From: Macrostomum lignano | Lineage: Eukaryota | Direction: 5' to 3' | DNA length: 64,000 nt | Assembly: GCA_002269645.1 (NCBI GenBank) | Contig: NIVC01002457.1 | Coordinates: forward strand, 43,693 to 107,692 | Shown here: piece by piece, positions 120 through 62,000 of the stretch | Numbering within the stretch: position 1 is the stretch's first letter | How the letters are laid out: each line of letters begins with the position of its first letter | The notes under the pieces: model-generated | Databases searched by the model: none | What the model saw: the letters and a program-made list of their open reading frames with translations, nothing else | What the model was told of the DNA's origin: nothing | Translations under genes and position numbers: made by a program

Positions 120-1040
<921 letters not shown>

Positions 1041-8511: not shown

Positions 8512-8711
<200 letters not shown>

Positions 8712-8844
8712 CTATCTATAGCCAGGACCTGCACCGGAGCGGTTACGAAAATTAGATTTCTCGGTAGTTGCACGTACTCTTTTGCACTACTTGAGTAGTC
8801 TGATTTTCGTTCGGCATGGCTAGTTCCAGCAGGTAGTTCCTCTG

Positions 8845-9841: not shown

Positions 9842-9862
9842 TGGTGACGCAGCGGTGGGATC
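9842..9862 (+). other. Primer-binding site, tRNA-Leu-like
   Basis: TGGTGACGCAGCGGTGGGATC starts 1 nt after the 5' LTR; complementary to the 3' end of tRNA-Leu(AAG/UAG)-type sequences (…UCCCACCGCUGCCACCA) except for a 2-nt insertion. Confidence 0.7.
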
Positions 9863-25511: not shown

Positions 25512-25574
<63 letters not shown>

Positions 25575-28500: not shown

Positions 28501-31500
28501 CTTTCTTTATAGTTCACTGGGTTTCAGGTGAATGGTGGCCATGAATTCGAAATTTTATTATCAGGCACGTGGAGAGGTGAATCAGGTTTGAGGAGCAGTG
28601 TAACCTCCTTTGCCATCATCTTTCCTGTCTCCTTGTTCTCATCTCTAGTCTCTCCTTTCCTCTCATCTCTAGTCTCTCCATTTCTCTCATCTCTAGTCTC
28701 TCCTTTCCTCTCATCTCTAGTCTCTCCTTTCCTCTCATCTCTAGTCTCTCCTTTCCTCTTATCTCTAGTCTCTCCTTTCCTCTCATCTCTAGTCTCTCCT
28801 TTCCTCTCATCTCTAGTCTCTCCTTTCCTCTTATCTCTAGTCTCTCCTTTCCTCTCATCTCTAGTCTCTCCTTTCCTCTCATCTCTAGTCTCTCCTTTCC
28901 TCTCATCTCTAGTCTCTCCTTTCCTCTCATCTCTAGTCTCTCCTTTCCTCTCATCTCTAGTCTCTCCATTTCTCTCATCTCTAGTCTCTCCTTTCCTCTC
29001 ATCTCTAGTCTCTCCTTTCCTCTCATCTCTAGTCTCTCCTTTCCTCTTATCTCTAGTCTCTCCTTTCCTCTCATCTCTAGTCTCTCCTTTCCTCTTATCT
29101 CTAGTCTCTCCTTTCCTCTCATCTCTAGTCTCTCCTTTCCTCTCATCTCTAGTCTCTCCTTTCCTCTCATCTCTAGTCTCTCCTACCTCTCATCTCTAGT
29201 CTCTCCTACCTCTCATCTCTAGTCTCTCCTACCCTCATCTCCAGTCTCTCCTTTACTCTCATCTCCAGTCTCTCCTTTCCTCTCATCTCTAGTCTCTCCT
29301 TTTCTCTCATCTCTAGTCTCTCCTTTTCTCTCATCTCTAGTCTCTCCTTTCCTCTCATCTCTAGTCTCTCCTTTCCTCTCATCTCTAGTCTCTCCTTTTC
29401 TCTCATCTCTAGTCTCTCCTACCTCTCATCTCTAGTCTCTCCTACCTCTCATCTCTAGTCTCTCCTACCCTCATCTCCAGTCTCTCCTTTACTCTCATCT
29501 CCAGTCTCTCCTTTCCTCTCATCTCTAGTCTCTCCTTTTCTCTCATCTCTAGTCTCTTCTTTTCTCTCATCTCTAGTCTCTCCTTTCCTCTCATCTCTAG
29601 TCTCTCCTTTTCTCTCATCTCTAGTCTCTCCTTTTCTCTCATCTCTAGTCTCTCCTTTTCTCTCATCTCTAGTCTCTCCTTTCCTCTCATCTCTAGTCTC
29701 TCCTTTACTCTTATCTCCAGTCTCTCCTTTCCTCTCATCTCTAGTCTCTCCTTCCTCCTACTCGTCTCCTTAATCGTTTATCTCTCTTTGAAGCATATTT
29801 TTATCGATGAACCGAAAACTTTGAAGTGTCGTCTCTACTCTCTCCTTTCATCTCCTCTCTGTAATCAAATATATTAATCGGCATATTTTCAATCGCATTT
29901 CGTTTGTATCCATGGCAAAATATGAGCTCTAATCCGACCGGTCAATCGAAGCAAAACTTCTCAAGCGATTCAGCTAAAAAAGATGAAATTATAGTTTTAA
30001 CTCAGAAAAATAAATTTCTCTCTTTGAAGCCTGCCAATGCATTAAAACCAAATTCAAACTAAAGCCGGAAAGACGTCGCTAACAATAATTTATTGCCATT
30101 GTTGCTCTTCTGCTCGCGAAAATCCGTACGTATTTTCATTGATTCGTAAATAGCCTCTGATGGAGAGGTCGCGTTTCCTATGGTAGATAAATCTGTTACA
30201 TTTTAAGGCTAATATCTTCTTACTTTTGCAGGATTCTATAGCTAAATAAGAAGCCAAACATTATCTATTTGCAAAAATCAGCTTAGATTTTTTTTTCAAA
30301 AAATAACTTTTAATTAAAAGACCAAGGAATGCCTGAGATACGCTCGTGACGGTGACGGTGAACTTAAAAGGCCTATAATGAATCATGCATAAGACCTTGC
30401 CATGATTCTTCTACGAGCTAATTGAACTGAAATGAATTTTCCCAATGACCTTGAGGCGAACCTTTCAAATGACCTTAAAGCGATTATTTCAAATGACCTT
30501 GAGGCAATTTTTCCAAATGACCTTGAGGCGATTCTTCCAAATGACCTTGAGGCGATTCTTCCAAATGACCTTGATGTGATTCTTGATTCTAACAAAATAC
30601 CTGATGTGATTTTTCTAAATGATCCTGGCATAATTCTACCAAACTACTTCCGATATAGCTTTTTCCAAAGGACTTTATTTAATACCTCAAAAAGCTGAGG
30701 AGACTATAATTCTAATTACAGCATAAGGTGATAAAAACAATCTAAAACCTAGACGTCAAATGGCAAATGACCCAAGCTTACGGAAATAATCTAACTGAGT
30801 TGGGATTCATTACACCACCTGAGTAGGACGCTTTATCACCAGACATGGAACTGCTGACCCACTCTTAATAAGTATAGTTAATAGCTCACCTTGAGATCAC
30901 GATAAACGACGTATCTAGAGTGCATGTGCTCCAGTCCAAGGACAATTTCGGCTGCATAGAATTTCACTTCGCGCTCTTGGAAAACGCCGTGCTGCGACAG
31001 GTGATAGTGCAGATCGCCGCCGTTCATCAGGTCCAGGATGAAGCATAGCTTGTCGGTGGTCTGGAAAGCGTAGGTCATGCACACGATAAATGGGCAGCCT
31101 TCGCCAGTGCTAACTAACGAGAGCATGATTCGCTCGTTTAACGCCAAGGTCTCTCCGCCTTTGACTTTGATTCGCTTCTTGTCCAGGCATTTCATGGCGT
31201 ACATTCTGCCAGTGTCGGCTTTGCGACAGCCGTATACCTCGCCGAAACCACCGCGGCCGATGATGCGATGAACGCTGAAGTCGTTCATCGTTAGCTGAAG
31301 AGGTAGACGAATTTAAATATTATTTTAGAAACTTTACCTGTTAGCTGTACATGCATTATGCATTACAAACACACACCCACACACCACACACTCACGCTAA
31401 TGTTTAATTCGAAGTTTTTCCATTGCAGAAATCGCGTAAATTTATCAGAGGCAATAAATGGTTTGAAAGCCTCCCGGCTGAGTAGATCTTTAATCTCTTT

Positions 31501-32084
31501 AGTATAAGGACGAAAAGTATCCTGCGGAAGAGTCTTGGTCCTCTGAGCGGCAGTCAGGTGCTCCTGAACGCTTGCGGCAGCAGCTGCGCTGAATCGATGA
31601 CTATGGGCCAGGAGTTCTTGCATGATGAATGAGTCGTAAATATTTCTACCAAGACGGATGCGCATTTCTTCGCAATCTAATTCTTCAAACTTCTGTACTT
31701 CTTCGTAAAATGCGAAAACTTGGGCGTAGTCTTCCAGCTGCTGCTCCACGAACTCCTTCATCAATAGGAAGCCAAGGCGCTGATTAAAGATCTTCTCAAA
31801 CGTAATTTCTTCTCTTTTGGATAAATGCTTCATCATAATGCTTCGCACGCTGTGGGTGAAGTGAAAAAAAGCCGTCAATAACTCATACATAAAAAATTAT
31901 TGACTACGCTTGAACTCAACTGCAGTGGATATATGCAAGTACAGAATTTAATAATAAAGAAATGATCTCACCTGGCGGGTGGTAGAGTAATTTTCTTACT
32001 TGCCCTTGCCGCTGGAGTGGACTTGGATTTTTCCATTGCCATAAGATAGCTTACATCGGCTAATACTGCTTCTAAGTCTGCCAT
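18462..32084 (-). CDS. GRK2: G protein-coupled receptor kinase 2/3 (beta-adrenergic receptor kinase) orthologue, 6 exons, about 734 aa
   Basis: Exons (minus) 32084-31972, 31849-31396, 31294-30890, 24911-24374, 20012-19549, 18692-18462, all GT-AG and phase-consistent (2205 nt). N-terminus [26 protein letters not shown] domain, [25 protein letters not shown] tail, PH domain. Confidence 0.96.
18793..19480. repeat. 35-bp and 27-bp G-rich minisatellites in GRK intron 5
   Basis: GGGGTTGGGGGGTCGGTGTGTACAGGAGTGACTCT units grading into GGTGTACAGGAGTGATTATGGCATT(G/GA) units. Confidence 0.93.
20087..24000. repeat. 40-bp minisatellite in GRK intron 4
   Basis: About 97 near-identical units of GAGTGACAGTTGAGTGATTAGAGAGTGAGGGAAGGAACAA. 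Confidence 0.98.
24016..24303. repeat. 20-bp minisatellite in GRK intron 4
   Basis: (GAGTGACAAGAGTGACAGTG)n, about 14 copies. Confidence 0.96.
24932..25153. repeat. 18-bp minisatellite next to the GRK exon 4 acceptor
   Basis: (CAAATTGTCACTGAYAGT)n, about 12 copies. Confidence 0.95.
25507..25573. repeat. (CTG)n trinucleotide repeat
   Basis: About 20 CTG units in GRK intron 3. Confidence 0.95.
25793..27365. repeat. C-rich 12-bp-based minisatellite (CTCTCCCTGCCC with CAGTATCTCCCG variants)
   Basis: About 1.55 kb; G-rich on the GRK sense strand. Confidence 0.95.
28636..29752. repeat. 24-bp pyrimidine minisatellite (CTCTCATCTCTAGTCTCTCCTTTC)n
   Basis: Direct reading; source of the MRGKERLE and SSLVSPFL ORFs. 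Confidence 0.96.
30443..30570. repeat. Short 24-bp tandem repeat (CCAAATGACCTTGAGGCGATTCTT)
   Basis: About 5 degenerate copies. Confidence 0.85.
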
Positions 32085-37544: not shown

Positions 37545-40500
37545 ATGTTGAAACGCCTTGCTGGCAAGAAGACAAGCAGTTTGGCCACCTGCAAGCTGTG
37601 CATGGATGAGGTGTTCAAATCCGATATGATGACGCTGAAGGACTGCGGCTGCGCGTTCTGTCGGCCCTGCATGGAACGCTACGTGTCCCTGCTGATCTGG
37701 GAGGGCAATGTCGGCTTCATCAGCTGTCCAGACGGCGCTTGCTCAAGAATTGGCGAACTGCTGCCCAGCGAGATTGAGTCCCTGTGCTCAGCTCAACTGT
37801 ACAGGCGCTATCTACATCTGTGCTTTCTTAAAGAAGTCGAAATGGATCCTAGGCGCACATTTTGCCCCAGAGCCGGCTGCGAGACCGTCTTTAGCGTTGC
37901 CGGGCCCAGAGATCGAAAGTTCTCAATTGGTAGGCGACGCCAGAAAAAAATTGAGCGAGGCTGGCGCGTTGCCTGCCCAGCCTGCGGCTTGGTGTTCTGC
38001 TCCCGGTGCAAGCTGGAGTGGCACCGAGGCGTCGGGTGCGACCAGCAGCTGGCCAGGACGCACGGCATCTTGTTCACGCAGCCGCAGGACGCGCCTGTCA
38101 AACGTTGCCCAGTGTGCGCCATCCCAATTGAACGGGATCACGGATGCGCCCAGATGATGTGCAAACGGTGCAGACACATCTTCTGCTGGTACTGCCTGGC
38201 TAAGCTGGATGTGAGTGGCTGGCTAGATTAGCAATCCATTCTATTGCATTTTTACATGATGTTGGATAGATTAGCAATCCATTCTGTTCCTTCATCCATG
38301 ATGCTGGCTAGATTAGCAATCCATTCTATTCCTTTATCCTTGATTTTGGCTAGATTAGCAATCCATTCTATTCCTTCATCCATGATGTTGGCTAGATTAG
38401 CAATCCATTCTATTCCTTCATCCATGGTGTTGGCTAGATTAGCAATCCATTCTATTCCTTCATCCATGATGTTGGCTAGATTAGCAATCCATTCTATTCC
38501 TTCATCCATGGTGTTGGCTAGATTAGCAATCCATTCTATTCCTTCATCCATGGTGTTGGCTAGATTAGCAATCCAGTCTATTCCTTCATCCATGATGCTG
38601 GCTAGATTAGCAATCCAGTCTATTCCTCCATCCATGGTGTTGGCTAGATTAGCAATCCATTCTATTCCTTCATCCATGATGCTGGCTAGATTAGCAATCC
38701 ATTCTATTCCTTCATCCATGGTGTTGGCTAGATTAGCAATCCATTCTATTCCTTCATCCATGGTGTTGGCTAGATTAGCAATCCATTCTATTCCTTCATC
38801 CATGGTGTTGGCTAGATTAGCAATCCATTCTATTCCTTCATCCATGATGCTGGCTAGATTAGCAATCCAGTCTATTCCTTCATCCATGTTGTTGGCTAGA
38901 TTAGCAATCCATTCTATTCCTTCATCCATGATGCTGGCTAGATTAGCAATCCAGTCTATTCCTCCATCCATGGTGTTGGCTAGATTAGCAATCCATTCTA
39001 TTCCTTCATCCATGATGCTGGCTAGATTAGCAATCCATTCTATTCCTCCATCCATGATGTTGGCTAGATTAGCAATCCATTCTATTCCTTCATCCATGAT
39101 GCTGGCTAGATTAGCAATCCAGTCTATTCCTCCATCCATGGTGTTGGCTAGATTAGCAATCCATTATATTCCTTCATCCATGATGCTGGCTAGATTAGCA
39201 ATCCATTCTATTCCTCCATCCATGATGTTGGCTAGATTAGCAATCCATTCTATTCCTTCATCCATGGTGTTGGCTAGATTAGCAATCCATTCTATTCCTT
39301 CATCCATGCTGTTGGCTAGATTAGCAATCCATTCTATTCCTTCATCCATGATGCTGGCTAGATTAGCAATCCATTCTATTCCTTCATCCATGATGCTGGC
39401 TAGATTAGCAATCCAGTCTATTCCTCCATCCATGGTGTTGGCTAGATTAGCAATCCAGTCTATTCCTTCATCCATGATGCTGGCTAGATTAGCAATCCAT
39501 TCTATTCCTCCATCCATGATGTTGGCTAGATTAGCAATCCATTCTATTCCTTCATCCATGATGCTGGCTAGATTAGCAATCCATTCTATTCCTCCATCCA
39601 TGATGTTGGCTAGATTAGCAATCCATTCTATTCCTTCATCCATGATGCTGGCTAGATTAGCAATCCATTCTATTCCTCCATCCATGATGCTGGCTAGATT
39701 AGCAATCCATTCTATTCCTCCATCCATGATGTTGGCTAGATTAGCAATCCAGTCTATTCCTCCATCAATGATGTTGGCTAGATTAGCAATCCATTCTATT
39801 CCTTCATCCATGATGTTGGCTAGATTAGCAATCCATTCTGTTCCTTCATCCATGATGTTGGCTAGATTAGCAATCCAGTCTATTCCTTCATTCATGGTGT
39901 TGGCTAGATTAGCAATCCATTCTATTCCTCCATCCATGATGCTGGCTAGATTAGCAATCCATTCTATTCCTTCATCCATGCTGTTGGCTAGATTAGCAAT
40001 CCATTCTGTTCCTTCATCCATGGTGTTGGCTAGATTAGCAATCCATTCTATTCCTTCATCCATGATGCTGGCTAGATTAGCAATCCATTCTATTCCTTCA
40101 TCCATGCTGTTGGCTAGATTAGCAATCCATTCTATTTCTTCATCTAGTATTATCAACTAATCTAGCTAAAATCACTAATTTTTGGCACTGATAAATGTAC
40201 TGTTAAATCATGCACACGCGCTGGTGGACAAATTTAGCGTTTGACTTCTCATCGCAAATAATTTTCCCTAGCAACTATTTGTCGCATTTTCAGGGCGATT
40301 TCTTCCTGCGTCATTACGACCGAGGACCGTGCAAGTACAAACTCGGTCACTCGCGCGCCTCCCTTATCATGCACCGGATTCAGGTAAGCTGTCTTCGAGG
40401 CCGCTTAAAAATTGCTCACAGAGAATGGCTAGATAATAACTTCAACATTCGCTGAGCATTGCATATTCGTACGTCATGCTAATTCTCTTTTCACAATGTC

Positions 40501-42366
40501 TTATCAATCTGGCTTATGTTTTTAATCAGAATTTTTGTACAAATATGACGTTTGTTTAGCTTCGTGCCTCCCAGATTGTCCAGCTCAGCGTTCCAGCTAA
40601 ACTGGCTCGATTAGACTGGCTTATTCCCCCGGGCTTTGCCGAGATTTTCTCGTCAATTCGTCGAGGCAAAAATATTAATCTTTTTTTCAGCTTGTGGTGC
40701 CCTGTTTCATTTTTCAATGGAAAATAGTCTGCGATCATGTCGACTGGCGCGTCCTGCAAACACAAGCCAACAACCCTTCAGTGCCACAAGCCATCAACCC
40801 TTCAGTGCCACAAACCATCAACCCTTCAGTGCCACAAACCAACAACAACCCTTCAGTGCCACAAGCCATCAACCCTTCAGTGCCACAAGCCAACAACAAC
40901 CCTTCAGTGCCACAAGCCATCAACCGTTCAGTGCCACAAGCCATCAACCCTTCAGTGCCACAAACCATCAACCCTTCAGTGCCACAAGCCATCAACCCTT
41001 CAGTGCCACAAACCATCAACAACCCTTCAGTGCCACAAACCATCAACCCTTCAGTGCCACAAGCCAACAACAACCCTTCAGTGCCACAAGCCATCAACCC
41101 TTCAGTGCCACAAGCCATCAACCCTTCAGTGCCACAAACCATCAACAACCCTTCAGTGCCACAAACCATCAACCCTTCAGTGCCACAAACCATCAACCCT
41201 TCAGTGCCACAAACCATCAACAACCCTTCAGTGCCACAAGCCATCAACCCTTCAGTGCCACAAACCATCAACCCTTCAGTGCCACAAGCCAACAACCCTT
41301 CAGTGCCACAAGCCATCAACAACCCTTCAGTGCCACAAACCATCAACAACCCTTCAGTGCCACAAGCCATCAACCCTTCAGTGCCACAAACCATCAACCC
41401 TTCAGTGCCACAAGCCAACAATCCTTCAGTTCCACAAACCATCAACCCTTCAGTTCCACAAGCCAACAACCCTTCAGTTCCACAAGCCAACAACCCTTCA
41501 GTTCCACAAGCCATCAAGCCTTCAGTTCCACAAGCCAACAACCCTTCAGTTCCACAAGCCAACAACCCTTCAGTGCCACAAACCATCAACCCTTCAGTGC
41601 CACAAACCATCAACCCTTCAGTTCCACAAGCCAACAACCCTTCAGTTCCACAAGCCATCAAGCCTTCAGTTCCACAAGCCAACAACCCTTCAGTTCCACA
41701 AGCCAACAACCCTTCAGTGCCACAAGCCAACAACCCTTCAGTGCTACAAGCCAACAACAACCCTTCAGTGCCACAAGCCATCAACAACCCTTCAGTGCCA
41801 CAAGCCATCAGCCCTTCAGTGCCACAAACCATCAACAACCCTTCAGTGCCACAAGCCCTATAGTCCTTCAGACCCCTTTAATTCTGGCAATCTGATCGAC
41901 CGTCACCCGCTGCCCCGTTGCCCAGGTCGGTGCCATCTTTTTCGGCTTCTCCCTACTCGTAGTGATCGTCAGCCCGTTTGTACTCTTAGCGGCGCCATTT
42001 ATTGTCTGCTGCAAGTGCAAGTCGCTCTGTCGTCACTGCGCCGGCGGCGGCGGCGGCTGCTGCTACGACGTCGACAACGAGGACGACGGCGACAATTTTG
42101 ACGAAGAAAATCTTGGCGGCGAAGCGACCGCCGCCGCTGTTAACTGGCGCGACGCTACCCTGCGCCAACTCGGCGCCAGCTCGAGCTCAGGCGCCGCGGT
42201 CAAGCCCATTGAACAGGCTGATGAGGCGGCCGCGAACTCTGACGAGGAGGATTCCGACGCTGAGGACAACGGCAGTCGGTTTAGTGGGCCGCATCAGAGC
42301 GCCGCTGCCGTGGAGCTGCACCCGTGCCCGACGCTGATGACAACAAGCGATCGCCAAGAATATTGA
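37545..42366 (+). CDS. RNF144: RNF144-type RBR (RING1-IBR-RING2) E3 ubiquitin ligase with C-terminal TM helix, 3 coding exons, 398 aa
   Basis: Exons 37545-38210, 40294-40383, 41926-42366 (GT-AG, phase 0). CKLC...CGCAFC, IBR CPRAGC, RING2 [60 protein letters not shown]. An acceptor at 37541 implies an upstream UTR exon. Confidence 0.94.
38216..40145. repeat. 42-bp minisatellite filling RNF144 intron 1
   Basis: (GCTGGCTAGATTAGCAATCCATTCTATTCCTTCATCCATGAT)n, about 45 copies, starting 5 nt after the donor. Confidence 0.97.
40770..41858. repeat. 21/24-bp minisatellite in RNF144 intron 2
   Basis: (CAACCCTTCAGTGCCACAAGCCAT[CAA])n. Confidence 0.96.
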
Positions 42367-45310: not shown

Positions 45311-50715
<5,405 letters not shown>

Positions 50716-52057
50716 ATAGCGGATTAGCTTATGAAATAAACTTACTATAGTTCAATAGCTATAATTTCAGCTTAACGACTGCCTCAAGCGCTATAGCATT
50801 GAAAATTCTGTAGTTTGCTTACCGTGGTGTCATCGTCAATAGCTAGACAATGCAACTACTTTTTTGTTTAGGATAAAAAAATTATCCACCGATAAAAATA
50901 TGAAAACCATTTTTGTTCAAGATAATTATGTATTTTGAAATTTCGTACTCTTTGTTACTACTCTTTTAGTCAGTAGCTTGAATGAACATTTAGCGATTTT
51001 TCCAAGTATGAAAAAACAATTGGACGCTGATTGCTTTATTTTTTTCCAGCCAATTACTTTTAATAATAATTATATATTGATAACAGTAATATCTAGCTTT
51101 ACAATCATATTTTCCTGCTGATTTCAAGAATAATTAGTGTCATTAATAATATTTCCAATATTTTTATCAAACTTTTTTTACACGAAGTAGATTTATGTTG
51201 TCTTTTGTACGTTTTTGTTTTGAACTTTTTCAGTTTCCATGCTGCAGTCGCGCAGTTATTAATAGTCCGTTGCGGATTGGCAATATTTTATTTATTTAGC
51301 TGTTTCTAAATCAATATAATTAATCCTTTAAGTATTCTAGTTGATTCTAATCAAGAATTAGATGCGCGTTTCAATCCTGACAAATCTTGGAGATTTTCTT
51401 ATTTATTGAATGAAAATTTGTTATACATTGTAATAAGAGCGTAATAACATCTTGAAGCTTACTCGTACGAGCGTACGTGTGTGTCAAGAAAAGACAGTTT
51501 AAAATACACTAGTAATTGTAATGTTGGCCTTCCTACCTTCCTACCAGCTACTGCAGGCGCACTCACGATGGCAGGAGCCACTATCTGCTTGGCAAATGAA
51601 TTCAAGGAGAACAATAGCCACAAAATTTCCCGAAAGCAAATTTTCCCGTGCAGAAAATTTGAAGTGGCTTTGGAAGCGACAAAACGGCCCTTTTCAGTAA
51701 CTACCGATTTGGAAATTTGAGCAATTCAAGTTGGCTGAGAAGAGCCACTACAGATGCAGCTGGCACGGGAAACAAGTGGAAGCCAATATTCAGGTGTTAA
51801 CTGTCAACGCAGAACTGTATTTGATGAAATTTGAGGCTAAAATAGACACCTAATTGTTCTCCAACATCCCCAGCTAACACTCGGTACACAACTAGCTGAA
51901 ACTCTCAGCAACAGATGGCAAGAATGGAAAAAGCCCTTTTTCGCAAGCCTTATACTATAAATACAAGACCGCATGCAGCTCCCCTCGTTGAAAAGAACCC
52001 ACAGTAAATGATTCAGAGAGTCCTCGTTGTGACTCAAATTTTGATTTGTTACTCAAA

Positions 52058-53341
52058 ATGCATCTAAACGCTGAGCAGCTGCAGTGCCTTGTCACCATCT
52101 ACATTCTCCTTGTACTGTGCAACAAATTCTCGATGGGGAAGGTAAGCACCGACCCGGAAGCTGATCTCATATTTTATCTGAAGAACAACATCACCAAGTA
52201 CAGCCCGCTATTGCGGCCGCTTCTCAACTCTAGCGAGATTCATTACATTAACATGGACATTTCCGTGACTCAGCTAGTGTCTGTGGACAGCGCCAAGCAG
52301 AGTGTGAAAATTTCTGCACTCACTTTAGCCAGATGGCTTGAGGAGCGACTAGTATGGGATCCGGCCAGCTTTGGGAATATTACGACAATCAACTGGAACG
52401 CGGATGACATTTGGTTCCCAGTTATCTTGATGTACAACGGCATCGGCGACAACCAAGTCCTAGCGAAACAGATACCGGTGTATCTGACCTCTTGGACGCC
52501 TAACGCAACGTTTGTTACGGCTACGTGGCGCAACGATATTGAATTCTCCTGCCAATTCGATATGAGAAAATTTCCGTTGGACCAGCACACCTGTGAGCTG
52601 CTGTTCTTTATTAGCGACCAGGGCCACGGCAACAGAATGGTGCAGCCGAAACGATTAGTGCCGTCGTTCAACGTGCTCGGCACCTACCAGTCCAACAGCG
52701 AATGGATCATGCTGAACGCTAGCACCAGGGCGGAGCCGCAGCTGTTCGAAGTGTTCGAAGGCAGGCCGCCAATTCCGTTGCCAACATTTCTTTTTCGATT
52801 TGAAATCAAGCGAGTGTCGATTTATTATTTTGTTAATATTATCACGCCGCTATTGCTGCTGACGCTGCTCCAAGTGCTGGTGTATTTTGTACCAGTGGAG
52901 TCCGGCGAGAAGCTGGGATTCGGCATCACAATCATGCTCAGCTACACCGTGTTCCTGCTGCTTCTAGCCGATATCGTTCCAAAGTCAGAAGATACGCCAG
53001 CGATCGCTTCGTTCATCACGGCCGCTATGATAATTTCTACCGTATCCCTGCTACTGACTTCCGTGATCATGCGATTCCAATTCGCCCGGAGGGAGCGCGA
53101 ATGCCCGCCTGTGTCCGGGCCGTAGCTGTTCGCTTTTTAGGCCGCCTGTTCTGCGTCAGCGGCGCCTCCGGTCCGCCAGTCGACAGCGTGACTAGCATGC
53201 GCCGAAAATCCGACCAAGATAACGATTGCGTCAGATCCGATTGGGTGGTGGCAGCGCACGCTTTGGAGCGTCTCATGGTGGCCCTCGGGTGGCTGCCACA
53301 GTCGCTATCATCGGTACTTCGTCATCAGGCCGTACACTTAA
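52058..53341 (+). CDS. Intronless Cys-loop ligand-gated ion channel subunit, copy 1 (nAChR-like, non-alpha); three 1-bp deletions near the 3' end
   Basis: Hydrophobic N-terminus, Cys-loop CQFDMRKFPLDQHTC, M1-M3 with SGEK. The ORF stops at 53125, but alignment to copy 2 restores MX, M4 and RPYT* (TAA 53339-53341) if single bases are added near 53088, 53288 and 53317. Confidence 0.85.
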
Positions 53342-54290
53342 GATCGACGGAAATCGTCAAGTAAAGTCAACCGACTCGTTGAAACTACGAATAATTTCTG
53401 CTTCTATTCTTTTTTTTTTATTAAAATCTTTCTCACTATAGAAAACTTATACCGTACTTACCCTAGTTTCTTGAATCACACGGTGATTAAATATCCGAGC
53501 TTCACAAGCTGTTTGCTTTGATTTTGAAAAAAAAAACTTTAGGTAAAATTGAGATCCTTTAATCCCTTTCAGGTTTGAGAATTGAGAACCTGTTCTAAAA
53601 ATTTCTGGTCGTATATAATTTCTTGTCCAAAGTCTGTCACTGATGAAACTCCATATCTCAATATACTAAAACTTACTAATATAAATACCTACGCACGTTC
53701 CCACGTAAATATATCTGACTCCTAAACCGTCTGTGTATCAAAAGACTTGTTTAACAGACTACAAAGACTAAATAGATTTATTTTCACTATATAGACTTGC
53801 AATTTCTGTCTGAAACCGTGCAATCAATCACCCGTTCGACGAATCAAGTTGTTCAAACTAGAATTTTTTTATTTTAACGCAAGTCCTAGAAACTTTCGTC
53901 CGCTCCTCTCCATGGTATGATTGAATTTCAAACGAAAGGACTGAAATTGAGAGTAAAGAAAAGACGAGAGCTAAATCTTGTGAACTCCATACGCTCAGCT
54001 CCCTATTATCAAACAAGAGCTAAACCGACTACAGTAAGCTAACAGCAATTCTTCACAAGAACGAACAAGAATTTAATCGAGCTGAACACACACAATTCCC
54101 TAAACGGTAAACACAGCCGGAAAAGGTGGCGTACGGGTTTATAGCAGAATGTCAAACAATGGTAGGGAAGGAGAGGAAGCGGGATCTTGAAATATAGCAT
54201 ATAGAGACCAAGCATTACCAATACTCTCGACAAGAAAGTTGAACAAGAGAATCGAGACTGTCGGAGCCATCGAGACCTTCGGTATAAGTT

Positions 54291-55592
54291 ATGTCGGCGA
54301 CCACGACACTTCTTGTTGCTATCTGTCTACTTGGACTCCCAACTGAAGCGCAACAACCACCAGACTACGAAGCTGAATTAATCAAATATCTGAGCAACAA
54401 CATAAGCAATTTTAGTCCGCTACTCAAGCCAATAAAAGACCTGAGAAGACAAATGAAAATCAGAGTTGGCTGCATGGTTACCGGCCTAGTCTCCGTGGAC
54501 AGCGCCAGACAAAGTGTAAAGCTGGCGGTTTTCCTACAGACGAGCTGGCCAGAAGAGCGACTTGTCTGGAACGCGTCACAGTTTGGCAACTTGTCTGTGG
54601 TGAGCCGGGATGTCAGCCAGACATGGTTTCCCGTGATCATTATTTACAATGGCATCGGAGACAACCAGTTGCTGCTGCCTCAGATACCAGTTTTCTTGAG
54701 ATCGATGTCGCCAAATCTAACGCTAAGCACAGCGGCTTGGCGCAGAGAACTGGAATTCACCTGCCAATTCGACATGACCAGGTTCCCGCTAGACAGGCAC
54801 ATCTGCGATGTGGAATTCTTTTTTAGCGATCAGGGTCATAACAATAAGCTGATTCGTCTAGTGGACAGTAAGCCCGCATTCAACACCCTTGGAATTTACA
54901 AGGAGAACGGTGAATGGCAAATGATCAACGCTACTTCGCTGGTAGAGTACAGAAAGTACAATGTTTTCAACTCTATGCCGCCTGTTCTGCTGCCAACCTA
55001 CATTGTTCGAATTGAAATCCAGCGCGTGTCGGCTTACTACTTCATGAACATCATCACGCCGCTGCTGCTGCTGACTCTGCTCCAAGTGCTGGTGTACTTT
55101 GTGCCTCTGGAGTCCGGTGAGAAGCTGGGATTCGGCGTCACAATCATGCTCAGCTACACCGTGTTCCTGCTACTACTAGACGACATTGTGCCGAAGTCTC
55201 GAGCAACTCCGGCGATCGCTTCGTTCATCACGGCGGCTATGATTGTATCTGGCGTATCCCTGCTGCTGACCTTAATTATGATGCGATTCCACTTCGCTGC
55301 GGGCGGAGCTCGAATGTCAGCCTGTGCTCGGGTCGTGCTCGTTCGCTTTTTAGGCCGCCTGCTCTGCGTTAGCGCCGCCGGCTCGCGGGTCGGCCAGCAG
55401 ACTCCAAGCAATCACTGCAGCGAGGTTAGCATCAGGAAGGCTGACGTTGATGAAACCGATGATGCTAGGACTACCGACCAGCAGTCCGAATGGATGGTGG
55501 CAGCGCACGCATTGGAGCGACTCATGGTTGTGCTTGGAGTTGCTGCTACAGCCGCCATTATTGGAGTCTTTGTTGTGAAACCGTATATTTGA
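54291..55592 (+). CDS. Intronless Cys-loop ligand-gated ion channel subunit, copy 2 (nAChR-like, non-alpha), 433 aa
   Basis: Complete single-exon ORF: signal peptide, WFPVIIIYN, Cys-loop CQFDMTRFPLDRHIC, M2 SGEKLGFGVTIMLSYTVFLLLL, short M3-M4 loop, M4. Confidence 0.93.
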   Translation: MSATTTLLVAICLLGLPTEAQQPPDYEAELIKYLSNNISNFSPLLKPIKDLRRQMKIRVGCMVTGLVSVDSARQSVKLAVFLQTSWPEERLVWNASQFGNLSVVSRDVSQTWFPVIIIYNGIGDNQLLLPQIPVFLRSMSPNLTLSTAAWRRELEFTCQFDMTRFPLDRHICDVEFFFSDQGHNNKLIRLVDSKPAFNTLGIYKENGEWQMINATSLVEYRKYNVFNSMPPVLLPTYIVRIEIQRVSAYYFMNIITPLLLLTLLQVLVYFVPLESGEKLGFGVTIMLSYTVFLLLLDDIVPKSRATPAIASFITAAMIVSGVSLLLTLIMMRFHFAAGGARMSACARVVLVRFLGRLLCVSAAGSRVGQQTPSNHCSEVSIRKADVDETDDARTTDQQSEWMVAAHALERLMVVLGVAATAAIIGVFVVKPYI

Positions 55593-56086
55593 CCTGAAAA
55601 ACACTGGAACGATTTATGATGATTAGTTACCTTAACTACTGAGGATATAATCTCCAGAATTTGTTGGAGAAATTAGTCGAAAATGCACCAGAACATCATT
55701 CTCGTTGGGTAACTTCGATTAAATCTCGTAGATAATACATGTAGGTATCTCTACTTGTAGCTGGGCCCCCTGGAATCAGTTGGGTCACATTGGGTCTGGT
55801 TCAGTCATCAGTAAATGTACTTTTATGCTTCTTACACGAAGTTAATAAATTCTGGAACATCATCCTTACTACCATCATTCTCATTACAATTACAAATCAA
55901 ATAAGTAGCTGTGGAAAATATAAAACGAATATGTTTTAGTAACTAAGCGATAAAGAAGAGGAAAATCTCGCACAAAAAAGTGTAAACACGAGGCTTTTTA
56001 TTAACGAAAAAGAAAAATGCCTTTTTTATATCCATGCAGGACGTAGACGGCAAAACAGAAAGTAAGACCGAATTTGATAAAATTTT

Positions 56087-59000
56087 TCAAGCTTTCCGAG
56101 GCTCGCTGCCCATCCTGGGAAACAGCGAACCAAATAAATTGGACAATAGCTCGTCGAGTTCAGCGGCGCCTCCAGCCGACGTGCCGTCCAATGGTTTGAC
56201 AGCATCAGCGATTCGTAACAACGCAGCGTATTGAGCTCGCGACAGACGCAAATACTGCAGATTCTGTTGGGCCCTGGCCCAATAGTCCGGCAGGAAGGCT
56301 GGCAGCTTGTGCAACTCGCCGGGTTGTTCAGCCAGTGCCGACGGGCGATGATGATGAAGGTCGCGGACGGCTGCAGGACCGACGGATAAAGTGGTGTAGT
56401 TACCAATTTCCTCTAGCTCAAAACTGAACCACTTAAAAAGTTTATTAAAGCCAGGGGCTGTGTACAACCTGTCGCACTTTACCGGTAAGCGACACTGTCA
56501 CACAATCGGCAAGAGGCATTACTGCCAATTCCGCCGATACGTTCGCAGTCATACGCATAAACTCACACAGGAGTATACAGCGTCGCCCTAACTTGTTTAT
56601 CATTAGACATGTACACTTCACTGTGCCTTTGGGATTGGCTTTCAAGAGCATTAATTTTACGAGCAGAGCCAAGCCGAGATTCTTCCAATTTAGCCCGAAA
56701 TTAATATTGACAGCACTTGGAATCGAGTCTGGGTCGCTGGCATATCATGGCTGTGGTCTTTTTTCTCCTGGCAACCTACGCGAACTCAAAAACTTATAGC
56801 GGTCACCCAAGTGGCAGATCAGCTCAGAGGAAAGCGCCACACACTCATTAGGGGCTTAACACGAAAACTTTTTCCAAGGGCTGTCTGTATGAGTATTCTC
56901 CAGAATGAATGCCAGGATGCCACAACCCTGTTGCAATTATTATTATTATTATTAATACAGTCACCACCTGCAAAATCGAATCCTTAGACTGCACAGCTCG
57001 AGTCAAAAACTCTGACTGCTCATCGCCTTGGATGCTTCCAATTCTTTTTCTATTTTCGAAGTCTCATTGACGATTCGTATAGATCATCTACATAAGCTTC
57101 GATCATAAAAACACTCACGCAGCAGAGTCTTGGCGCCTAATAGCGTGAACACGGTGGCCTCGAAATTCAAATCCTCCACTCCGATGCTCAGCCTGATGCG
57201 GCCTTCTAGAATGAACACGGCGTAATCGGGGCACGCCTCGACGATAAATTGTATTGCGATCGTCGTCTCCGTGACTGTTGGGTATAGAGACACGTTAACG
57301 GCATTCATTGATTACGGGCTAGGCTGGTTTAACTACTAACAGTAGAAAAAAGGAACATAAATATGAAAAAACTGTAATATTGCAATTTGACTTTCAAAAG
57401 TGTAACTATTCACTCACATAAACATATGCTTGATGAGAACTTTTTCCTGGAACATTCGTTCCAGCACAATTTCGGGAATAACTCGCTTGCCAAAGAGGTC
57501 ACTGTGTTCTGCGAGGAGAAAATATTGGTGAGCTATTATTTTATTAACTATTACACAGACAATTGGCAATGAAATAACTTCATTAGATAAGTAGGAAAGA
57601 TCTGTTCTGGGAGGCTGGCACAGCAACTGAGGATCTGGGAGGCTGGCACAGCAACTGAGGATCTGGGAGGCTGGCACAGCAACTGAGGATCTGGGAGGCT
57701 GGCACAGCAACTGAGGATCTGGGAGGCTGGCCCAGCAACTGAGGATCTGGGAGGCTGGCCCAGCAACTGGCACTCTGGGAGGCTGGCTCAGCAACTGAGG
57801 ATCTGGGAAGCTAGCCCAGCAACTGAGGATCTGGGAGGCTGGTGGCCCAGCAACTGAGGATCTGGGAGGCTGGCCCAGTAACTGAGGATCTGGGAGGCTG
57901 GCCCAGCAACTGAGGATCTGGGAGGCTGGCCAAGCAACTGAGGATCTGGGAGGCTGGCTTAGCTACTGGGGTTCTGGGAGGCTGGCCCAGCAACTGAGGA
58001 TCTGGGAGGCTGGCCCAGCAACTGAGGATCTGGGAGGCTGGCCCAGCAACTGAGGATCTGGGAGGCTGGCTCAGCAACTGAGGATCTGGGAGGTTGGTGG
58101 CCCAGCAACTGAGGATCTGGGAGGCTGGCCCAGCAACTGAGGATCTGGGAGGCTGGCCCAGCAACTGAGGATCTGGGAGGCTGGCTTAGCTACTGGGGTT
58201 CTGGGAGGCTGGCCCAGCAACTGAGGATCTGAGAGGCTGGCTCAGCAACTGAGGATCTGGGAGGCTGGTGGCTCAGCAACTGAGGATCTGGGAGGCTGGC
58301 CCAGCAACTGAGTATCTGGAAGGCTGGTTGCCCAGCTTACGGATCGCCAGGCAGTGCACCGCGGCCATCCGGAGCTGAGCTGGAACCTGCATGCCGGTGC
58401 TGCCAGCCAGGGCCAGTTCGCGCCAGGACACTCGAGGCACGCGTGGCGGCGGACGGTGCGACGGTTGGGCTGCAAAATTCGATTGATTTATTAATAAAGC
58501 ATCTCATCATTATGCAGCCAATTGTCAGAGAGGGGCTTCTTGGGAATTGCCAATTCATGTCAATTCTGCTGACCCCTGATTACAAAACCGTACACAGATG
58601 AGTACGAAAGCATGCTAGTACAGCGGTCCTGATTTTTAACCGTCGGGCGTGAACAGTCACTATGCCTTGAGGGGTTGCCCCTCATGGCTATGAATCGCAC
58701 GACAATCTTTAGCCAATTTTTGTGCACACACAAGCCCCGAAGGAATTTGGCTTTGCCCCTGTCTCTTAGGTGGGCGCCCCTGTCTCTTAGGTGGGCGCCC
58801 CTGTCTCTTAGGTGGGCGCCCCTGTCTCTTGGGTGGGCGCCCCTGTCTCTTAGGTGGGCGTCCCTGTCTCTTAGGTGGGCGCCCCTGTCCCTTAGGTGGG
58901 CGCCCCTGTCTCTTAGGTGGGCGCCTTTGTCCCTTAGGTGGGCGCCTTTGTCTCTTAGGTGGGCGCCTTTGTCTCTTAGGTGGGCGCCTTTGTCTCTTAG

Positions 59001-62000
59001 GTGGGCGTCCCTGTCTCTTAGGTGGGCGCCCCTGTCTCTTAGGTGGGCGTCCCTGTCTCTTAGGTGGGCGCCCCTGTCTCTTAGGTGGGCGCCCCTGTCT
59101 CTTAGGTGGGCGCCCCTGTCTCTTAGGTGGGCGTCCCTGTCTCTTAGGTGGGCGCCCCTGTCTCTTAGGTGGGCGCCCCTGTCTCTTAGGTGGGCGCCCC
59201 TGTCTGGGTGACAGGTCACAGAAAACTCTCACAAGAAACGTCAGTCTCGTCCTCAATCTCTTCTTGAATAATCTCTTCCAAGATGTCCTCAAGCGTTACC
59301 ATGCCAACCGTGGACTCTTCGTTCACTTCGACTCCAATTGCATCCGTTTCTCTATGCCTAACAATTGCCATATGCACTCGGTTGCTCAAGAAGAGTTTCA
59401 GCGCGCTATCCAGAGTATCCGTGTCCATAACTGAGTGTACTTTTCTGTTGAAATATTCGCAGACTAAATCCACTCGCATTGGCGCGTCGCGACTAACTAT
59501 AGTTAGATCTTTGAAATTGAGCACGCTGATAATGTTGCTCCGTTCGCGATCATAAATTGGTATCCTGGTGAAACCGGTCTCCCGGATCTGCTCAACTGTG
59601 AACGAGTCAATCAGGGTCTCAGCCGGTAGCATATAAACTTCGCTTAGTCCGCGCATTACCTGACCAATCGTTTTATTCTGAAGCGATAGCGCGCCCAAAA
59701 TTATGTTAGCCTCTGTCCGCTCCAGATTCTGGTTAGCTATGAACTCCTTGAGCTTGTTGCGGTCGTACACCTGGTATAGGGTGCGTAGGATCCATGAGAT
59801 CAATCAGTGGCTTTCCATCAGATCAATCAGTGACTTTCCATCAGATCAATCAGTGACTTTCCATCATATCAATCAGTGACTTTCCATCAGATCAATCAGT
59901 GACTTTCCATCAGATCAATCAGTGACTTTCCATCAGATCGATCAGTGCATTTTTATCAGATCAATCAGTGACTTTCTATTAGATCAATCAATGTATTTCT
60001 ATCAGATCAATCAGTGTATTTCTATCAGATCAGTCAGTGCATTTTCATCATATCAGTGACTTTCTATCAGACTACTCAGTGAATTTCTATCAGATTAATC
60101 AGTGAAATTCTATCCGATCAATTAGTGACTTTCTATCAGATCAATCAGTGACTTTCTATCAGATTAATCAGTGACTTTCTATCAGATTAATCAGTGAAAT
60201 TCTATCCGATCAATTAGTGAGTTTCTATCAGATCAATCAGTGACTTTCTATCAGATTATTCAGTGACTTTCTATCAGATCAATCAGTGAATTTCTATCAA
60301 ATTAATCTGTGAATTTCTATCAGACCAATCAGTGACTTTCTATTAGATCAATCAATGTATTTCTATCAGATCAGTCAGTGCATTTTCATCATATCAGTGA
60401 CTTTCTATCATATCAATCAGTGACTTTCTATCAGAACAATCAGTGACTTTCCATCAGATCAATCAGTGACTTTCTATCAGAACAATCAGTGACTTTCCAT
60501 CAGAACAATCAGTGAATTTCCATCAGATCAATCAGTGACTTTCTATCAGATCAATCAGTGACTTTCTATCAGATCAATCAGTGACTTTCCATCAGATCAA
60601 TCAGTGACTTTCTATCAGATCAATCAGTGACTTTCTATCAGATCAATCAGTGACTTTCTATCAGATTAATCAGTGACTTTCTATCAGAAAGATCAGTGAA
60701 TTTCTATCAGACTATTCAGTGAATTTCTATCAGAAAGATCAGTGAATTTCTATCAGAAAGATCAGTGAATTTCTACCAGAAAGATCAGTGAGTTTCTATC
60801 AGATCAATCAGTGAATTTCTTTCAGATCAATCAGTGACTTTCTATTAGACCAATCAGTGACTTTCTATCAGACCAATCAGTGACTTTCTATTAGATCAAT
60901 CAATGTATTTCTATTAGATCAGTCAGTGCATTTTCATCATATCAGTGACTTTCTATCAGATTAATCAGTGACTTTCTATCAGATTAATCAGTGACTTTCT
61001 ATCAGATCAATCAGTGAATTTCTATCAGATTAATCAGTGAATTTCTATCAGATCAATCAGTGACTTTCCATCAGATTAATCAGTGACTTTCTATCAGAAA
61101 GATCAGTGAATTTCTATCAGACTATTCAGTGAATTTCTATCAGAAAGATCAGTGAATTTCTATCAGAAAGATCAGTGAATTTCTACCAGAAAGATCAGTG
61201 AGTTTCTATCAGATCAATCAGTGAATTTCTTTCAGATCAATCAGTGACTTTCTATTAGACCAATCAGTGACTTTCTATCAGACCAATCAGTGACTTTCTA
61301 TCAGACCAATCAGTGACTTTCTATTAGATCAATCAATGTATTTCTATTATATCAGTCAGTGCATTTTCATAATATCAGTGACTTTCTATCAGATTAATCA
61401 GTGACTTTCTATCAGATTAATCAGTGACTTTCTATCAGATCAATCAGTGAATTTCTATCAGATCAATCAGTGACTTTCCATCAGATCAATCAGTGAACTC
61501 GCTCAGAGATCACTTCTTAATGATTCCACAACAACTTGCCTGCAATGAAAATGACCTCAACATGCAATACACCTCGTACTGCGATACAGAAATCGCAAGC
61601 AATGAGATAAAATGAAAAGAGGACCGTAGTTAATTCAAGGCTCGATATTATTAGGATAAAAAGGCTGGCATTATTGAAAGCGACGAAAATGTCGCATCTG
61701 TTAACACACTGTAGACTCTGTACATGTAGGCTTCAGTCGTATCCTTCATCATCACTGCCGAAAATGTCTCTAGGCGTTAAGCTTACCTGTCTCAAATCCT
61801 GGCCGAGTATCTTGTCCAACAGTACGGACAATGGAAAGCTGATTGGAGCAGTTAAAGCCATAAACAGTATGGTAATTGGCAGGGTAAATGCGCCAATAGC
61901 CAATCCGTGACGGTGCACACAGCCTGAGGAATAATTTCGCCAAACAGCACAATACCAAGAGATGCCGCTATCACAGTGGTTATACCATCGCCAATTAGCG

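What the first reader, a model, noticed from the sequence alone, without database searches (positions are those of the whole stretch)
52058..55592. Tandem intronless Cys-loop receptors with a conserved cation pore but no acetylcholine box: candidate flatworm chemosensory receptor family
Seen: two single-exon paralogues in an otherwise intron-rich region. M1-M3 are nearly identical (SGEK, -1' Glu, L9', V13', acidic 20'), while the extracellular domains have diverged strongly. By manual alignment to alpha7 nAChR, both lack the loop C vicinal Cys and Y195 (EVF/NVF ... L), loop B Trp149 (FF-x-SDQG), the WxPD Asp (WFPV) and loop D Trp55 (L/F). Only the loop A Tyr is kept. Established: octopus chemotactile receptors are intronless, clustered nAChR-derived channels that lost ACh-binding residues and detect environmental compounds. 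Inference: an independent, retroposition-derived radiation of orphan ligand-gated cation channels, possibly for contact chemosensation.
Basis: partly seen in the sequence, partly recalled or inferred. Interest (0 to 1): 0.85.

Follow-up and report, generated by a model that had tools for sequence, protein, structure and literature searches.

The report
Orphan nicotinic-like channel genes, flatworm
Two neighbouring intron-free genes of the flatworm Macrostomum lignano encode nicotinic-receptor-like cation channel subunits that have lost the acetylcholine-binding residues. They belong to a small flatworm-specific family whose ligand is unknown, and one copy carries three frameshifts.

Summary
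The observation mostly holds. Window 52058-55592 carries two same-strand, single-exon Cys-loop channel genes.

- **W2 (54291-55592):** intact, 433 aa.
- **W1 (52058-53341):** not an intact ORF. Three 1-bp deletions in its last 260 bp put the MX/MA/M4 region out of frame. This is either a very recent pseudogene or a local assembly error.
- **Residue claims:** confirmed in a 54-sequence alignment. The SGEK/-1' Glu, L9', V13', D20' pore is present. TrpB, TyrC2, TrpD, the vicinal Cys pair and the WxPD Asp are lost.
- **Organism and family:** the window is Macrostomum lignano. A second locus there carries three more intact tandem intronless copies plus a fragment. With P0002 that makes at least 6 paralogues (45-57% identity), forming a 100%-bootstrap clade on a long stem.
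- **Nearest relatives:** canonical alpha7/alpha9-10-like subunits at about 20-26% identity. No chemotactile receptor appears among the listed PDB hits.
- **Selection:** the extracellular domain (ECD) is under purifying selection (dN/dS about 0.18).

Best reading: orphan cation-selective pLGIC subunits not gated by ACh at a canonical site. They parallel the intronless tandem nAChR expansions known in molluscs. A chemosensory role is untested, and retroposition is plausible but leaves no trace.

The parts
54291..55592 (+). W2: intact single-exon CDS (433 aa) of a nAChR-family Cys-loop subunit
   Evidence: ORF. Pfam LBD 5e-22 and TM 2e-19. Best PDB hit is human alpha7, 2.7e-38. AF2 mean pLDDT 88, and Foldseek's top hit is alpha7.
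52058..53341 (+). W1: paralogue CDS, readable end to end only after repairing three 1-bp deletions (428 aa once repaired)
   Evidence: DNA alignment to W2, three-frame translation, repaired translation. 57% aa identity to W2.
52058..53125 (+). W1 ORF as assembled (355 aa from the ATG): signal peptide, ECD and M1-M3, then a premature TAG. It lacks MX, MA and M4.
53085..53086 (+). W1 frameshift 1: 1-bp deletion in TTC GC- CCG, just after M3
53288..53289 (+). W1 frameshift 2: 1-bp deletion in CTC GG- GTG, at the start of M4
53314..53315 (+). W1 frameshift 3: 1-bp deletion in ATC GG- TAC, within M4. Net -3 restores the original frame and the homologous stop at 53339-53341.
54762..54806 (+). W2 Cys-loop (C158...C172, CQFDMTRFPLDRHIC)
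   Evidence: Read directly from the sequence. Both Cys are invariant in all alignments.
54807..54836 (+). W2 loop B region DVEFFFSDQG, with Ser at the TrpB (alpha7 W149) position
54954..54998 (+). W2 loop C region (KYNVFNSMPPVLLPT): Tyr188 equivalent kept, vicinal Cys replaced by V-F, Tyr195 replaced by Leu
55029..55292 (+). W2 M1-M3 (helices 247-268, 277-297, 308-334), including the M2 pore ESGEKLGFGVTIMLSYTVFLLLLDD
   Evidence: AF2 secondary structure and alignment to alpha7
55452..55586 (+). W2 MA-M4 helix (residues 388-432)
51956..51962 (+). TATAAAT about 100 bp upstream of the W1 ATG. Possible core promoter, by inference only.
55844..55849 (+). AATAAA about 250 bp downstream of the W2 stop. 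Possible poly(A) signal, by inference only. An ATTAAA at 53420 follows W1.

Best explanation
W1 and W2 are members of a Macrostomum-specific clade of nicotinic-receptor-family Cys-loop subunits. The clade descends from an alpha7/alpha9-10-like ancestor. It became intronless before it diversified and then multiplied by local tandem duplication.

The channel half is held almost unchanged. That half comprises the M1-M3 helices, the -1' Glu, L9' and V13' gate residues, the acidic 19'/20' ring, the Cys-loop FPxD motif, the pre-M1 Arg and the M2-M3 Pro. The proteins should therefore assemble into pentameric, cation-selective, ligand-gated channels.

The orthosteric pocket has been rebuilt in every paralogue. 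The changes are:
- TrpB -> S/I/A/N
- TyrC2 -> L/I
- Cys-Cys -> an aliphatic/Phe pair
- TrpD -> L/F/I/Y
- WxPD Asp -> V/L/I/E

The cation-pi box for a quaternary ammonium is gone, so acetylcholine is very unlikely to be the agonist at a canonical site. Another ligand, still unknown, is expected to gate the channel.

- **Shown:** family membership, pore motifs, pocket substitutions, purifying selection, clade structure, tandem intronless arrangement.
- **Inferred:** cation selectivity, non-ACh gating, assembly into channels.
- **W2:** looks functional.
- **W1:** was under constraint until very recently. Its three clustered 1-bp deletions are either an assembly artefact or a very young inactivation.
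For: - **Family and fold:** Pfam LBD plus TM domains. The best sequence match in the PDB is alpha7, and it is also the best fold match. The AF2 model is confident, with four TM helices.
- **Pore and gating motifs:** identical in all six paralogues.
- **Pocket substitutions:** shared by all six paralogues and partly conserved within the clade, e.g. Leu at the Y195 position in 5 of 6 and the SDQGH loop B motif in 3 of 6.
- **Selection:** dN/dS is 0.09-0.18 in M1-M3 and 0.18 in the ECD. Synonymous sites in the ECD are saturated.
- **Clade:** 100% bootstrap support with a 0.78 stem.
- **Ancestry:** the best single-domain hits outside the clade are canonical alpha-type subunits with a full aromatic box.
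- **Arrangement:** M. lignano locus L001 has three intact tandem intronless copies plus a fragment.
- **Host:** the window is M. lignano.
- **W1 history:** W1 has the shortest terminal branch. Its repaired C-terminus keeps clade motifs such as PEGxRMPxC and SDWVVAAHALERLMV.
Against: - There are no expression, ligand or electrophysiology data.
- As assembled, W1 lacks M4.
- TyrA and TyrC1 survive, so a non-canonical amine or choline-type ligand cannot be excluded.
- The subunits could be silent partners in heteromers rather than ligand-binding subunits.
- Only six paralogues are documented. Neither W2 nor W1 matched a database protein, and two of the three L001 copies are not called as genes. 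Protein databases therefore cannot give the family size.
Confidence: 0.72

Rival explanations
1. They are ionotropic chemoreceptors for environmental compounds, expressed in sensory cells. This would be a flatworm convergence on the cephalopod chemotactile receptors.
For: - They share with CRs an intronless structure, a tandem arrangement, a cation pore and the loss of ACh-box residues (CR properties from PMC11526382 and PMC13174522).
- The replacement residues at the loop C tip, at position 195 and at position 148 are aliphatic or aromatic. This recalls the hydrophobic CR pocket.
- Pocket positions are somewhat more variable among paralogues than the rest of the ECD: 34% vs 44% identity.
Against: - There are no expression or ligand data.
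- The documented family is small, at least 6 paralogues.
- The ECD is under clear purifying selection, with no detectable excess pocket variability (9% of random ECD sets are equally variable).
- Intronless tandem nAChR-like genes that lack box residues are common in lophotrochozoans. There they have been linked to development, immunity and stress rather than chemosensation (PMC6896357).
Confidence: 0.15
2. They are non-binding accessory (structural) subunits. They would co-assemble with canonical alpha subunits in ACh-gated heteromers, as vertebrate beta1, beta3 and alpha5 do.
For: - There is no vicinal Cys pair.
- The channel and gating machinery is fully conserved.
- Several paralogues could tune heteromer properties.
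Against: Non-alpha subunits in the 47-sequence comparison set still keep TrpB (46/47) and the WxPD Asp (45/47). This clade lost both. It also has a clade-specific 4-residue insertion in the loop E region, which carries an N-glycosylation motif in 5 of 6 members. The clade has no orthologues in other phyla.
Confidence: 0.15
3. W1 is a genuine, recently inactivated pseudogene, so the locus holds only one working gene.
For: - Three frameshifts lead to a premature stop at 53125 and loss of M4.
- About 2.4 kb of conserved exons of GRK2 and PP1 in the same window show no frameshift, so the assembly is not generally indel-ridden.
- Decayed copies of the family exist. There is a C-terminal fragment at L001:16369-16671. 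The ML_c-like protein P0014 diverges from the family alignment in its last ~50 residues.
Against: - All three lesions are 1-bp deletions next to short base runs. They are clustered in a 230-bp GC-rich stretch (62% GC).
- The preceding 1030 bp have no stop or indel.
- W1 has the shortest branch in the clade.
- The repaired C-terminus is well conserved.
- If the two later deletions fell at random in the gene, both landing in the last 256 bp has a chance of about 0.04 (my estimate).
- The retroelement at 9855-16113 is also disrupted mainly by frame changes.
Confidence: 0.45

Closest known systems
Intronless, tandemly arrayed nAChR-like expansions of lophotrochozoans (Jiao et al. 2019, PMC6896357)
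   Same: Both involve a lophotrochozoan host, single-exon genes and head-to-tail arrays. Both have a cation-type SGEK pore and frequently lose ACh-box residues. The highest-scoring database hits outside Macrostomum include fused tandem gene models from bivalves, annelids and nemerteans, several of which also lack TrpB or the Cys pair.
   Different: No flatworm is mentioned in that paper's main text. The copy number documented here is small (at least 6, against 99-217 in bivalves). The Macrostomum clade is a separate long-branch lineage with its own fixed set of substitutions.
Cephalopod chemotactile receptors (CRT1/CRB1; van Giesen 2020, Allard 2023 and Kang 2023, as summarised in PMC11526382 and PMC13174522)
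   Same: Both are nAChR-derived, intronless and clustered. Both keep a cation channel and have an orthosteric pocket stripped of ACh-binding residues.
   Different: The literature places CRs as a cephalopod/mollusc clade. No CR chain appears among the 60 listed PDB sequence hits or the 50 listed fold hits for W2. There is no evidence here of sensory expression, hydrophobic agonists or diversifying selection.
Human alpha7 nAChR (PDB 7KOO and others)
   Same: It is the best sequence hit (2.7e-38) and the best fold hit. It shares the M2 motif, the Cys-loop, the MX and MA helices, TyrA and TyrC1.
   Different: Foldseek gives only 22-24% identity. W2 lacks W55, D89, W149, Y151, C190-C191 and Y195.
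Alpo4, orphan nACh-like receptor of the annelid Alvinella pompejana (PMC10338036)
   Same: Both are lophotrochozoan orphan nAChR-like subunits without the vicinal Cys pair, each isolated in the phylogeny. Alpo4 shows no response to ACh or serotonin.
   Different: According to that paper Alpo4 keeps the key aromatic residues. The Macrostomum clade has lost most of them. I made no direct sequence comparison.

Membership tests
Cys-loop pentameric ligand-gated ion channel superfamily | Extracellular ligand-binding domain followed by a four-helix transmembrane domain | tested here: met
   Pfam PF02931 and PF02932 score above their cut-offs for W1 and W2. The AF2 model has a beta-sandwich plus helices at 247-268, 277-297, 308-334 and 388-432.
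Cys-loop pentameric ligand-gated ion channel superfamily | Disulfide loop of two Cys separated by 13 residues, with an FPxD motif | tested here: met
   The sequence CQFDMTRFPLDRHIC is present. Both Cys are invariant in all alignments.
Cation-selective nAChR/5-HT3 branch | -1' Glu (SGEK) without the Pro-Ala-Arg anion motif, plus L9' and an acidic extracellular ring | tested here: met
   ESGEK, L9', V13' and D20' are present in all six paralogues. Ion selectivity itself was not measured.
nAChR family (by similarity) | Closest characterised relatives are nAChR subunits | tested here: met
   In the PDB sequence search, alpha7, alpha3, alpha1, alpha4 and alpha6 rank first, and some beta and delta chains rank above the best 5-HT3A hit. 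The Foldseek top 50 are all nAChR chains.
ACh-binding alpha-type nAChR subunit | Vicinal Cys pair at the tip of loop C | tested here: not met
   The pair is V-F in W1 and W2, and L-I, I-I or I-F in the other paralogues.
ACh-binding nAChR subunit (principal or complementary face) | Aromatic box: TyrA, TrpB, TyrC1, TyrC2, TrpD | tested here: not met
   TyrA is kept and TyrC1 is kept as Y/F. TrpB -> S/I/A/N, TyrC2 -> L/I, TrpD -> L/F/I/Y.
Conventional non-alpha (beta-type) nAChR subunit | Keeps the structural loop B Trp and the WxPD Asp, and has orthologues across taxa | tested here: not met
   In the other representatives TrpB is W in 46/47 and Asp is D in 45/47, but both are lost in all six clade members. 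Nothing outside M. lignano exceeds about 32% identity.
Cephalopod chemotactile receptors | Intronless genes in genomic clusters, with ACh-binding residues lost | tested here: met
Cephalopod chemotactile receptors | Phylogenetic membership of the CR clade | tested here: inconclusive
   No CR sequence could be put in my tree. No CR chain appears among the 60 listed PDB sequence hits or the 50 listed fold hits. The Macrostomum clade is monophyletic on a long stem, and the literature restricts CRs to molluscs (PMC13174522). Non-membership is therefore likely.
Cephalopod chemotactile receptors | Expression in sensory cells and gating by poorly soluble environmental compounds | not testable with these tools
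   No expression or functional data are available. Literature searches found nothing on this clade.
Lophotrochozoan intronless tandem nAChR expansion (Jiao 2019) | Single-exon nAChR-like genes in tandem arrays in a lophotrochozoan genome | tested here: met
   The window has 2 copies and L001 has 3 copies plus a fragment, all on the same strand and all single-exon. The host is M. lignano.
Lophotrochozoan intronless tandem nAChR expansion (Jiao 2019) | Retroposition origin (poly(A) remnant, target-site duplication, or an intron-bearing parent gene) | tested here: inconclusive
   There is no flank homology between copies and no A-tract at either 3' end. No parent gene was identified. Intronlessness shared by all five genomic copies fits one old retroposition or intron loss.

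The most novel reading that the evidence does not exclude
Free-living flatworms independently turned an alpha7-like nicotinic receptor into a small family of ionotropic receptors for non-cholinergic cues, either environmental or endogenous. This would be a second, convergent 'chemotactile receptor'-type innovation outside molluscs, in a genetically tractable animal.
Probability: 0.15. Interest if true: 0.75.

Novelty: new member of a known kind. Interest (0 to 1): 0.4.

Why it matters
Repeated conversion of neurotransmitter-gated channels into receptors for other ligands is a current theme in sensory evolution; IRs arose from iGluRs and CRs from nAChRs. Intronless tandem nAChR-like expansions are documented in molluscs and annelids. 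I found no description of a flatworm clade.

M. lignano allows RNAi, in situ hybridisation and transgenesis, so this compact family of at least 6 genes is a practical place to de-orphanise such receptors. The finding also flags an annotation gap. Neither W2 nor the W1 ORF matched any protein in the databases searched, and two of the three copies at the second locus are not called as genes there.

If the subunits turn out to be plain accessory subunits or barely expressed genes, the finding is routine gene-family bookkeeping.

Tried and rejected
- **Exact-protein look-ups:** W2, the W1 ORF, P0001, P0002, P0007 and P0014 returned nothing. Only P0004 gave a locus.
- **Word-indexed homology search:** it returned only P0001-P0003 with a single query, and only P0001 and P0002 with the family profile. 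It cannot size the family.
- **Recent duplication:** rejected. Synonymous sites in the ECD are saturated (pS 0.72) and the flanks share no similarity.
- **Gene conversion as the cause of M1-M3 identity:** mostly rejected. The same about 80-86% TM identity holds between loci. W1-W2 pS in M1-M3 and the ICD is lower (0.39 against 0.5-0.8 in other pairs), so a partial conversion of the 3' half, or codon bias, remains a hint only.
- **Diversifying selection on the pocket:** not demonstrable. Site models were not attempted because there are only six sequences and dS is saturated.
- **Retroelement as a gauge of assembly indel error:** it has at least 5 frame changes against 1 in-frame stop, which does not discriminate.
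- **NJ topology inside the clade:** weakly supported (46-72%), so W1 and W2 cannot be assigned as orthologues of particular L001 copies.
- **Literature:** searches for Macrostomum LGICs or the locus tag found nothing relevant.
Full report
**What is in the window**

The + strand between 52058 and 55592 carries two reading frames. Both match the Pfam neurotransmitter-gated channel ligand-binding and transmembrane domains.

W2 (54291-55592) is an uninterrupted 433-aa CDS. It has a signal peptide, an extracellular domain with a 13-residue Cys-loop (CQFDMTRFPLDRHIC), M1-M3, a short intracellular loop with MX and MA helices, and M4.

An AlphaFold2 model built on a 52-sequence alignment is confident (mean pLDDT 88, pTM 0.78). 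It shows the expected beta-sandwich plus four TM helices.

The best PDB matches by sequence are human alpha7 (2.7e-38), followed by alpha3, alpha1, alpha4, alpha6 and then beta, delta and 5-HT3A chains. The 50 best Foldseek matches are all nAChR chains, led by alpha7.

**W1 is not intact as assembled**

W1 starts at ATG 52058 but its frame ends at TAG 53123-53125, just after M3.

DNA alignment to W2 and three-frame translation show three single-base deletions. They lie after 53085 (TTC GC-), after 53288 (CTC GG-) and after 53314 (ATC GG-). Each is at the third base of a four-fold degenerate codon and next to a short base run.

Repairing all three gives a 428-aa protein that ends at a stop (53339-53341) homologous to W2's. 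The repaired protein keeps clade-specific C-terminal motifs such as PEGARMPAC and SDWVVAAHALERLMVALGVAAT.

Evidence pointing to a very young lesion or a local consensus error:
- The first 1030 bp have no stop or indel.
- W1 has the shortest terminal branch of the clade.
- The three lesions cluster in a 62% GC stretch.

Evidence that the assembly is not generally indel-prone:
- About 2.4 kb of conserved GRK2 and PP1 exons in the same window are frame-clean.

I cannot decide between the two. I put a real pseudogene at about 45%.

**Residue-level claims**

I checked the binding-site claims in a HMMER alignment to alpha7 and in a 54-sequence MAFFT alignment. The MAFFT alignment holds six clade members, alpha7 and 47 representatives of other nAChR-like clusters.

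| alpha7 position | State in the six clade members | State in the 47 other representatives |
|---|---|---|
| W55 (loop D) | L/F/L/I/Y/F | W in 39/47 |
| D89 (WxPD) | V/V/L/V/I/E | D in 45/47 |
| W149 (loop B) | S/S/I/S/A/N | W in 46/47 |
| Y151 | Q/Q/P/Q/Q/M | Y in 33/47 |
| C190-C191 | VF/VF/LI/LI/II/IF | C in 32/47 (each position) |
| Y195 | L in five, I in one | Y in 32/47 |
| Y93 | kept in all six | Y in 34/47 |

One correction is needed. The Y188 equivalent is also kept (Y in four members, F in two), so loop A Tyr is not the only survivor.

The pore region ESGEKLGFG(V/I)TIMLSYTVFLLLL(D/A)(D/G) gives -1' Glu and L9'/V13' in all six. Position 20' is Asp in W1 and W2; in the other four it is Gly, with the Asp at 19'. 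The pre-M1 Arg, the Cys-loop FPxD motif and the M2-M3 Pro are kept.

**Domain contrast and selection**

W1 (repaired) and W2 compare as follows:

| Domain | aa identity |
|---|---|
| ECD | 50% |
| M1-M3 | 86% |
| ICD | 46% |
| MA-M4 | 77% |

The same roughly 80-86% M1-M3 identity holds between loci. It therefore reflects purifying selection rather than only local homogenisation.

ECD synonymous sites are saturated (pS 0.72) and ECD dN/dS is 0.18. The ECD is old and constrained, not free-running.

W1-W2 pS is lower in M1-M3 and the ICD (0.39). This hints at a past conversion of the 3' half or at codon bias.

Pocket positions are a little more variable among paralogues than the rest of the ECD (34% vs 44% identity). 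However, 9% of random ECD position sets are equally variable.

**Organism and family**

The closest database protein is Macrostomum lignano PAA92206.1 (55% identity).

A spliced GRK exon pair from the window is 99% identical to a M. lignano UniProt entry; the next best hit is 69%. The window is therefore M. lignano itself, and W1 and W2 are further paralogues. Neither protein matched anything in the databases searched.

The GenBank locus of PAA92206.1 (L001) holds three intact, same-strand, single-exon copies at 7863-9188, 10001-11305 and 12783-14105. It also holds a C-terminal fragment at 16369-16671. Only the middle copy is annotated.

With P0002, the family has at least six paralogues at 45-57% pairwise identity.

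An exhaustive HMMER search of 1.84 billion cluster representatives found only P0002 and two M. lignano fragments as close relatives. Every other hit is at 32% identity or less over the matched stretches.

In an NJ tree the six form a clade with 100% bootstrap support on a 0.78 substitutions/site stem. Internal nodes are weak.

The best-scoring single domains outside the clade (about 135-150 bits) are mostly canonical alpha7/alpha9-10-like alpha subunits. They come from an annelid, Lingula, amphioxus and corals, and have a full aromatic box and the Cys pair. The ACh box was therefore lost within the Macrostomum lineage.

Many other high-ranking hits are 660-1470-aa fused models of tandem nAChR-like genes from bivalves, annelids, nemerteans and a hemichordate. 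Several of these have independently lost TrpB or the Cys pair.

**Genomic context**

The two genes lie between a multi-exon PP1 gene (exons 46184-46702, 49592-49789, 50338-50478) and a CBS-domain exon on the minus strand at 59216-59803. A five-exon GRK2-like gene lies further upstream. So 'intronless among intron-bearing neighbours' is correct.

The flanks of W1 and W2 share no detectable similarity, and neither 3' end has an A-tract. There is no direct trace of retroposition.

All five genomic copies are single-exon. That fits one old retroposition or intron loss before the clade diversified, followed by tandem duplication.

**Mechanism**

The most likely reading (about 0.7) is that these are subunits of pentameric, cation-selective ligand-gated channels. 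Their orthosteric site no longer binds acetylcholine in the canonical cation-pi manner, and the agonist is unknown.

The replacement residues are largely aliphatic or aromatic at the loop C tip and at positions 195, 148 and 55. In loop B they are polar or acidic (S-D-Q-G-H). Part of this new pocket is conserved across paralogues, which argues for a new binding function rather than decay.

Alternatives:
- Accessory subunits of ACh-gated heteromers. This is weakened because ordinary non-alpha subunits keep TrpB and the WxPD Asp.
- Chemosensory receptors in the manner of cephalopod CRs. This is attractive by analogy but has no supporting data.

**Comparison with what is known**

Jiao et al. [quoted passage not shown] Flatworms are not mentioned in that paper.

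Cephalopod CRs are intronless, clustered, nAChR-derived cation channels with a hydrophobic pocket (PMC11526382, PMC13174522). No CR chain appears among the best sequence or fold matches for W2.

Alpo4 is an annelid orphan that lacks the Cys pair but keeps the aromatic residues (PMC10338036).

The Macrostomum clade is thus a new member of a known kind in a phylum where I found no description of it.

**Verdict**

- 'Orphan cation channel' and 'lineage-specific, not beta-type' are supported.
- 'Radiation' is modest.
- 'Retroposition' is plausible but untraceable.
- 'Chemosensory' is untested.
- Interest is moderate.

Noticed in passing
window 1-1066, 1614-2606, 4670-7840, 20000-24000, 25500-27425, 28528-29199, 38244-40160, 40636-42100, 57606-58327, 58755-59205: The window is packed with long minisatellite arrays, with units of about 21-28 bp where measured. 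They produce huge spurious ORFs and strong local GC skew (up to 0.78 at 20-24 kb). Several sit inside introns of the GRK2-like gene.
   Followed up: partly
window 9855-16113 (+): A retroelement with a gag zinc knuckle, RT, RNase H and integrase. RT and integrase are each split cleanly across two frames. There are at least 5 frame changes but only one in-frame stop, so this is either a young decayed copy or a sign of indel errors in GC-rich sequence.
   Followed up: partly
window 19552-32084 (-): A GRK2/beta-adrenergic-receptor-kinase-like gene. Five exons were detected by tblastn, with two short gaps (75 and 128 bp) and two multi-kb, repeat-filled gaps between them. It is 99% identical to M. 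lignano A0A1I8GCM8, which identified the organism.
   Followed up: yes
window 37545-38231 (+), 46184-50478 (+), 59216-59803 (-): Other host gene pieces: an IBR/RING-type exon, a PP1 catalytic subunit with at least 3 exons, and a CBS-domain exon.
   Followed up: partly
L001 7863-9188, 12783-14105, 16369-16671: In the GenBank M. lignano contig NIVC01000059.1, two intact LGIC paralogues flank the annotated gene PAA92206.1 but are not called as genes. A fourth, C-terminal-only fragment lies downstream. The family is under-annotated.
   Followed up: yes
proteins P0006, P0008-P0013, P0015-P0035 (representative search): Many top-scoring hits outside Macrostomum are 660-1470-aa gene models with two or three LGIC domains, from bivalves, annelids, nemerteans and a hemichordate. 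They are probably tandem intronless genes fused by gene predictors. Several lack TrpB or the Cys pair, which shows parallel loss of the ACh box.
   Followed up: partly
window 52800-53200 vs 55020-55420: Synonymous divergence between W1 and W2 is lower in M1-M3 and the intracellular loop (pS 0.39) than in the ECD (0.72). It is also lower than in inter-locus pairs (0.5-0.8). This may reflect an old gene conversion of the 3' half, or codon bias.
   Followed up: partly
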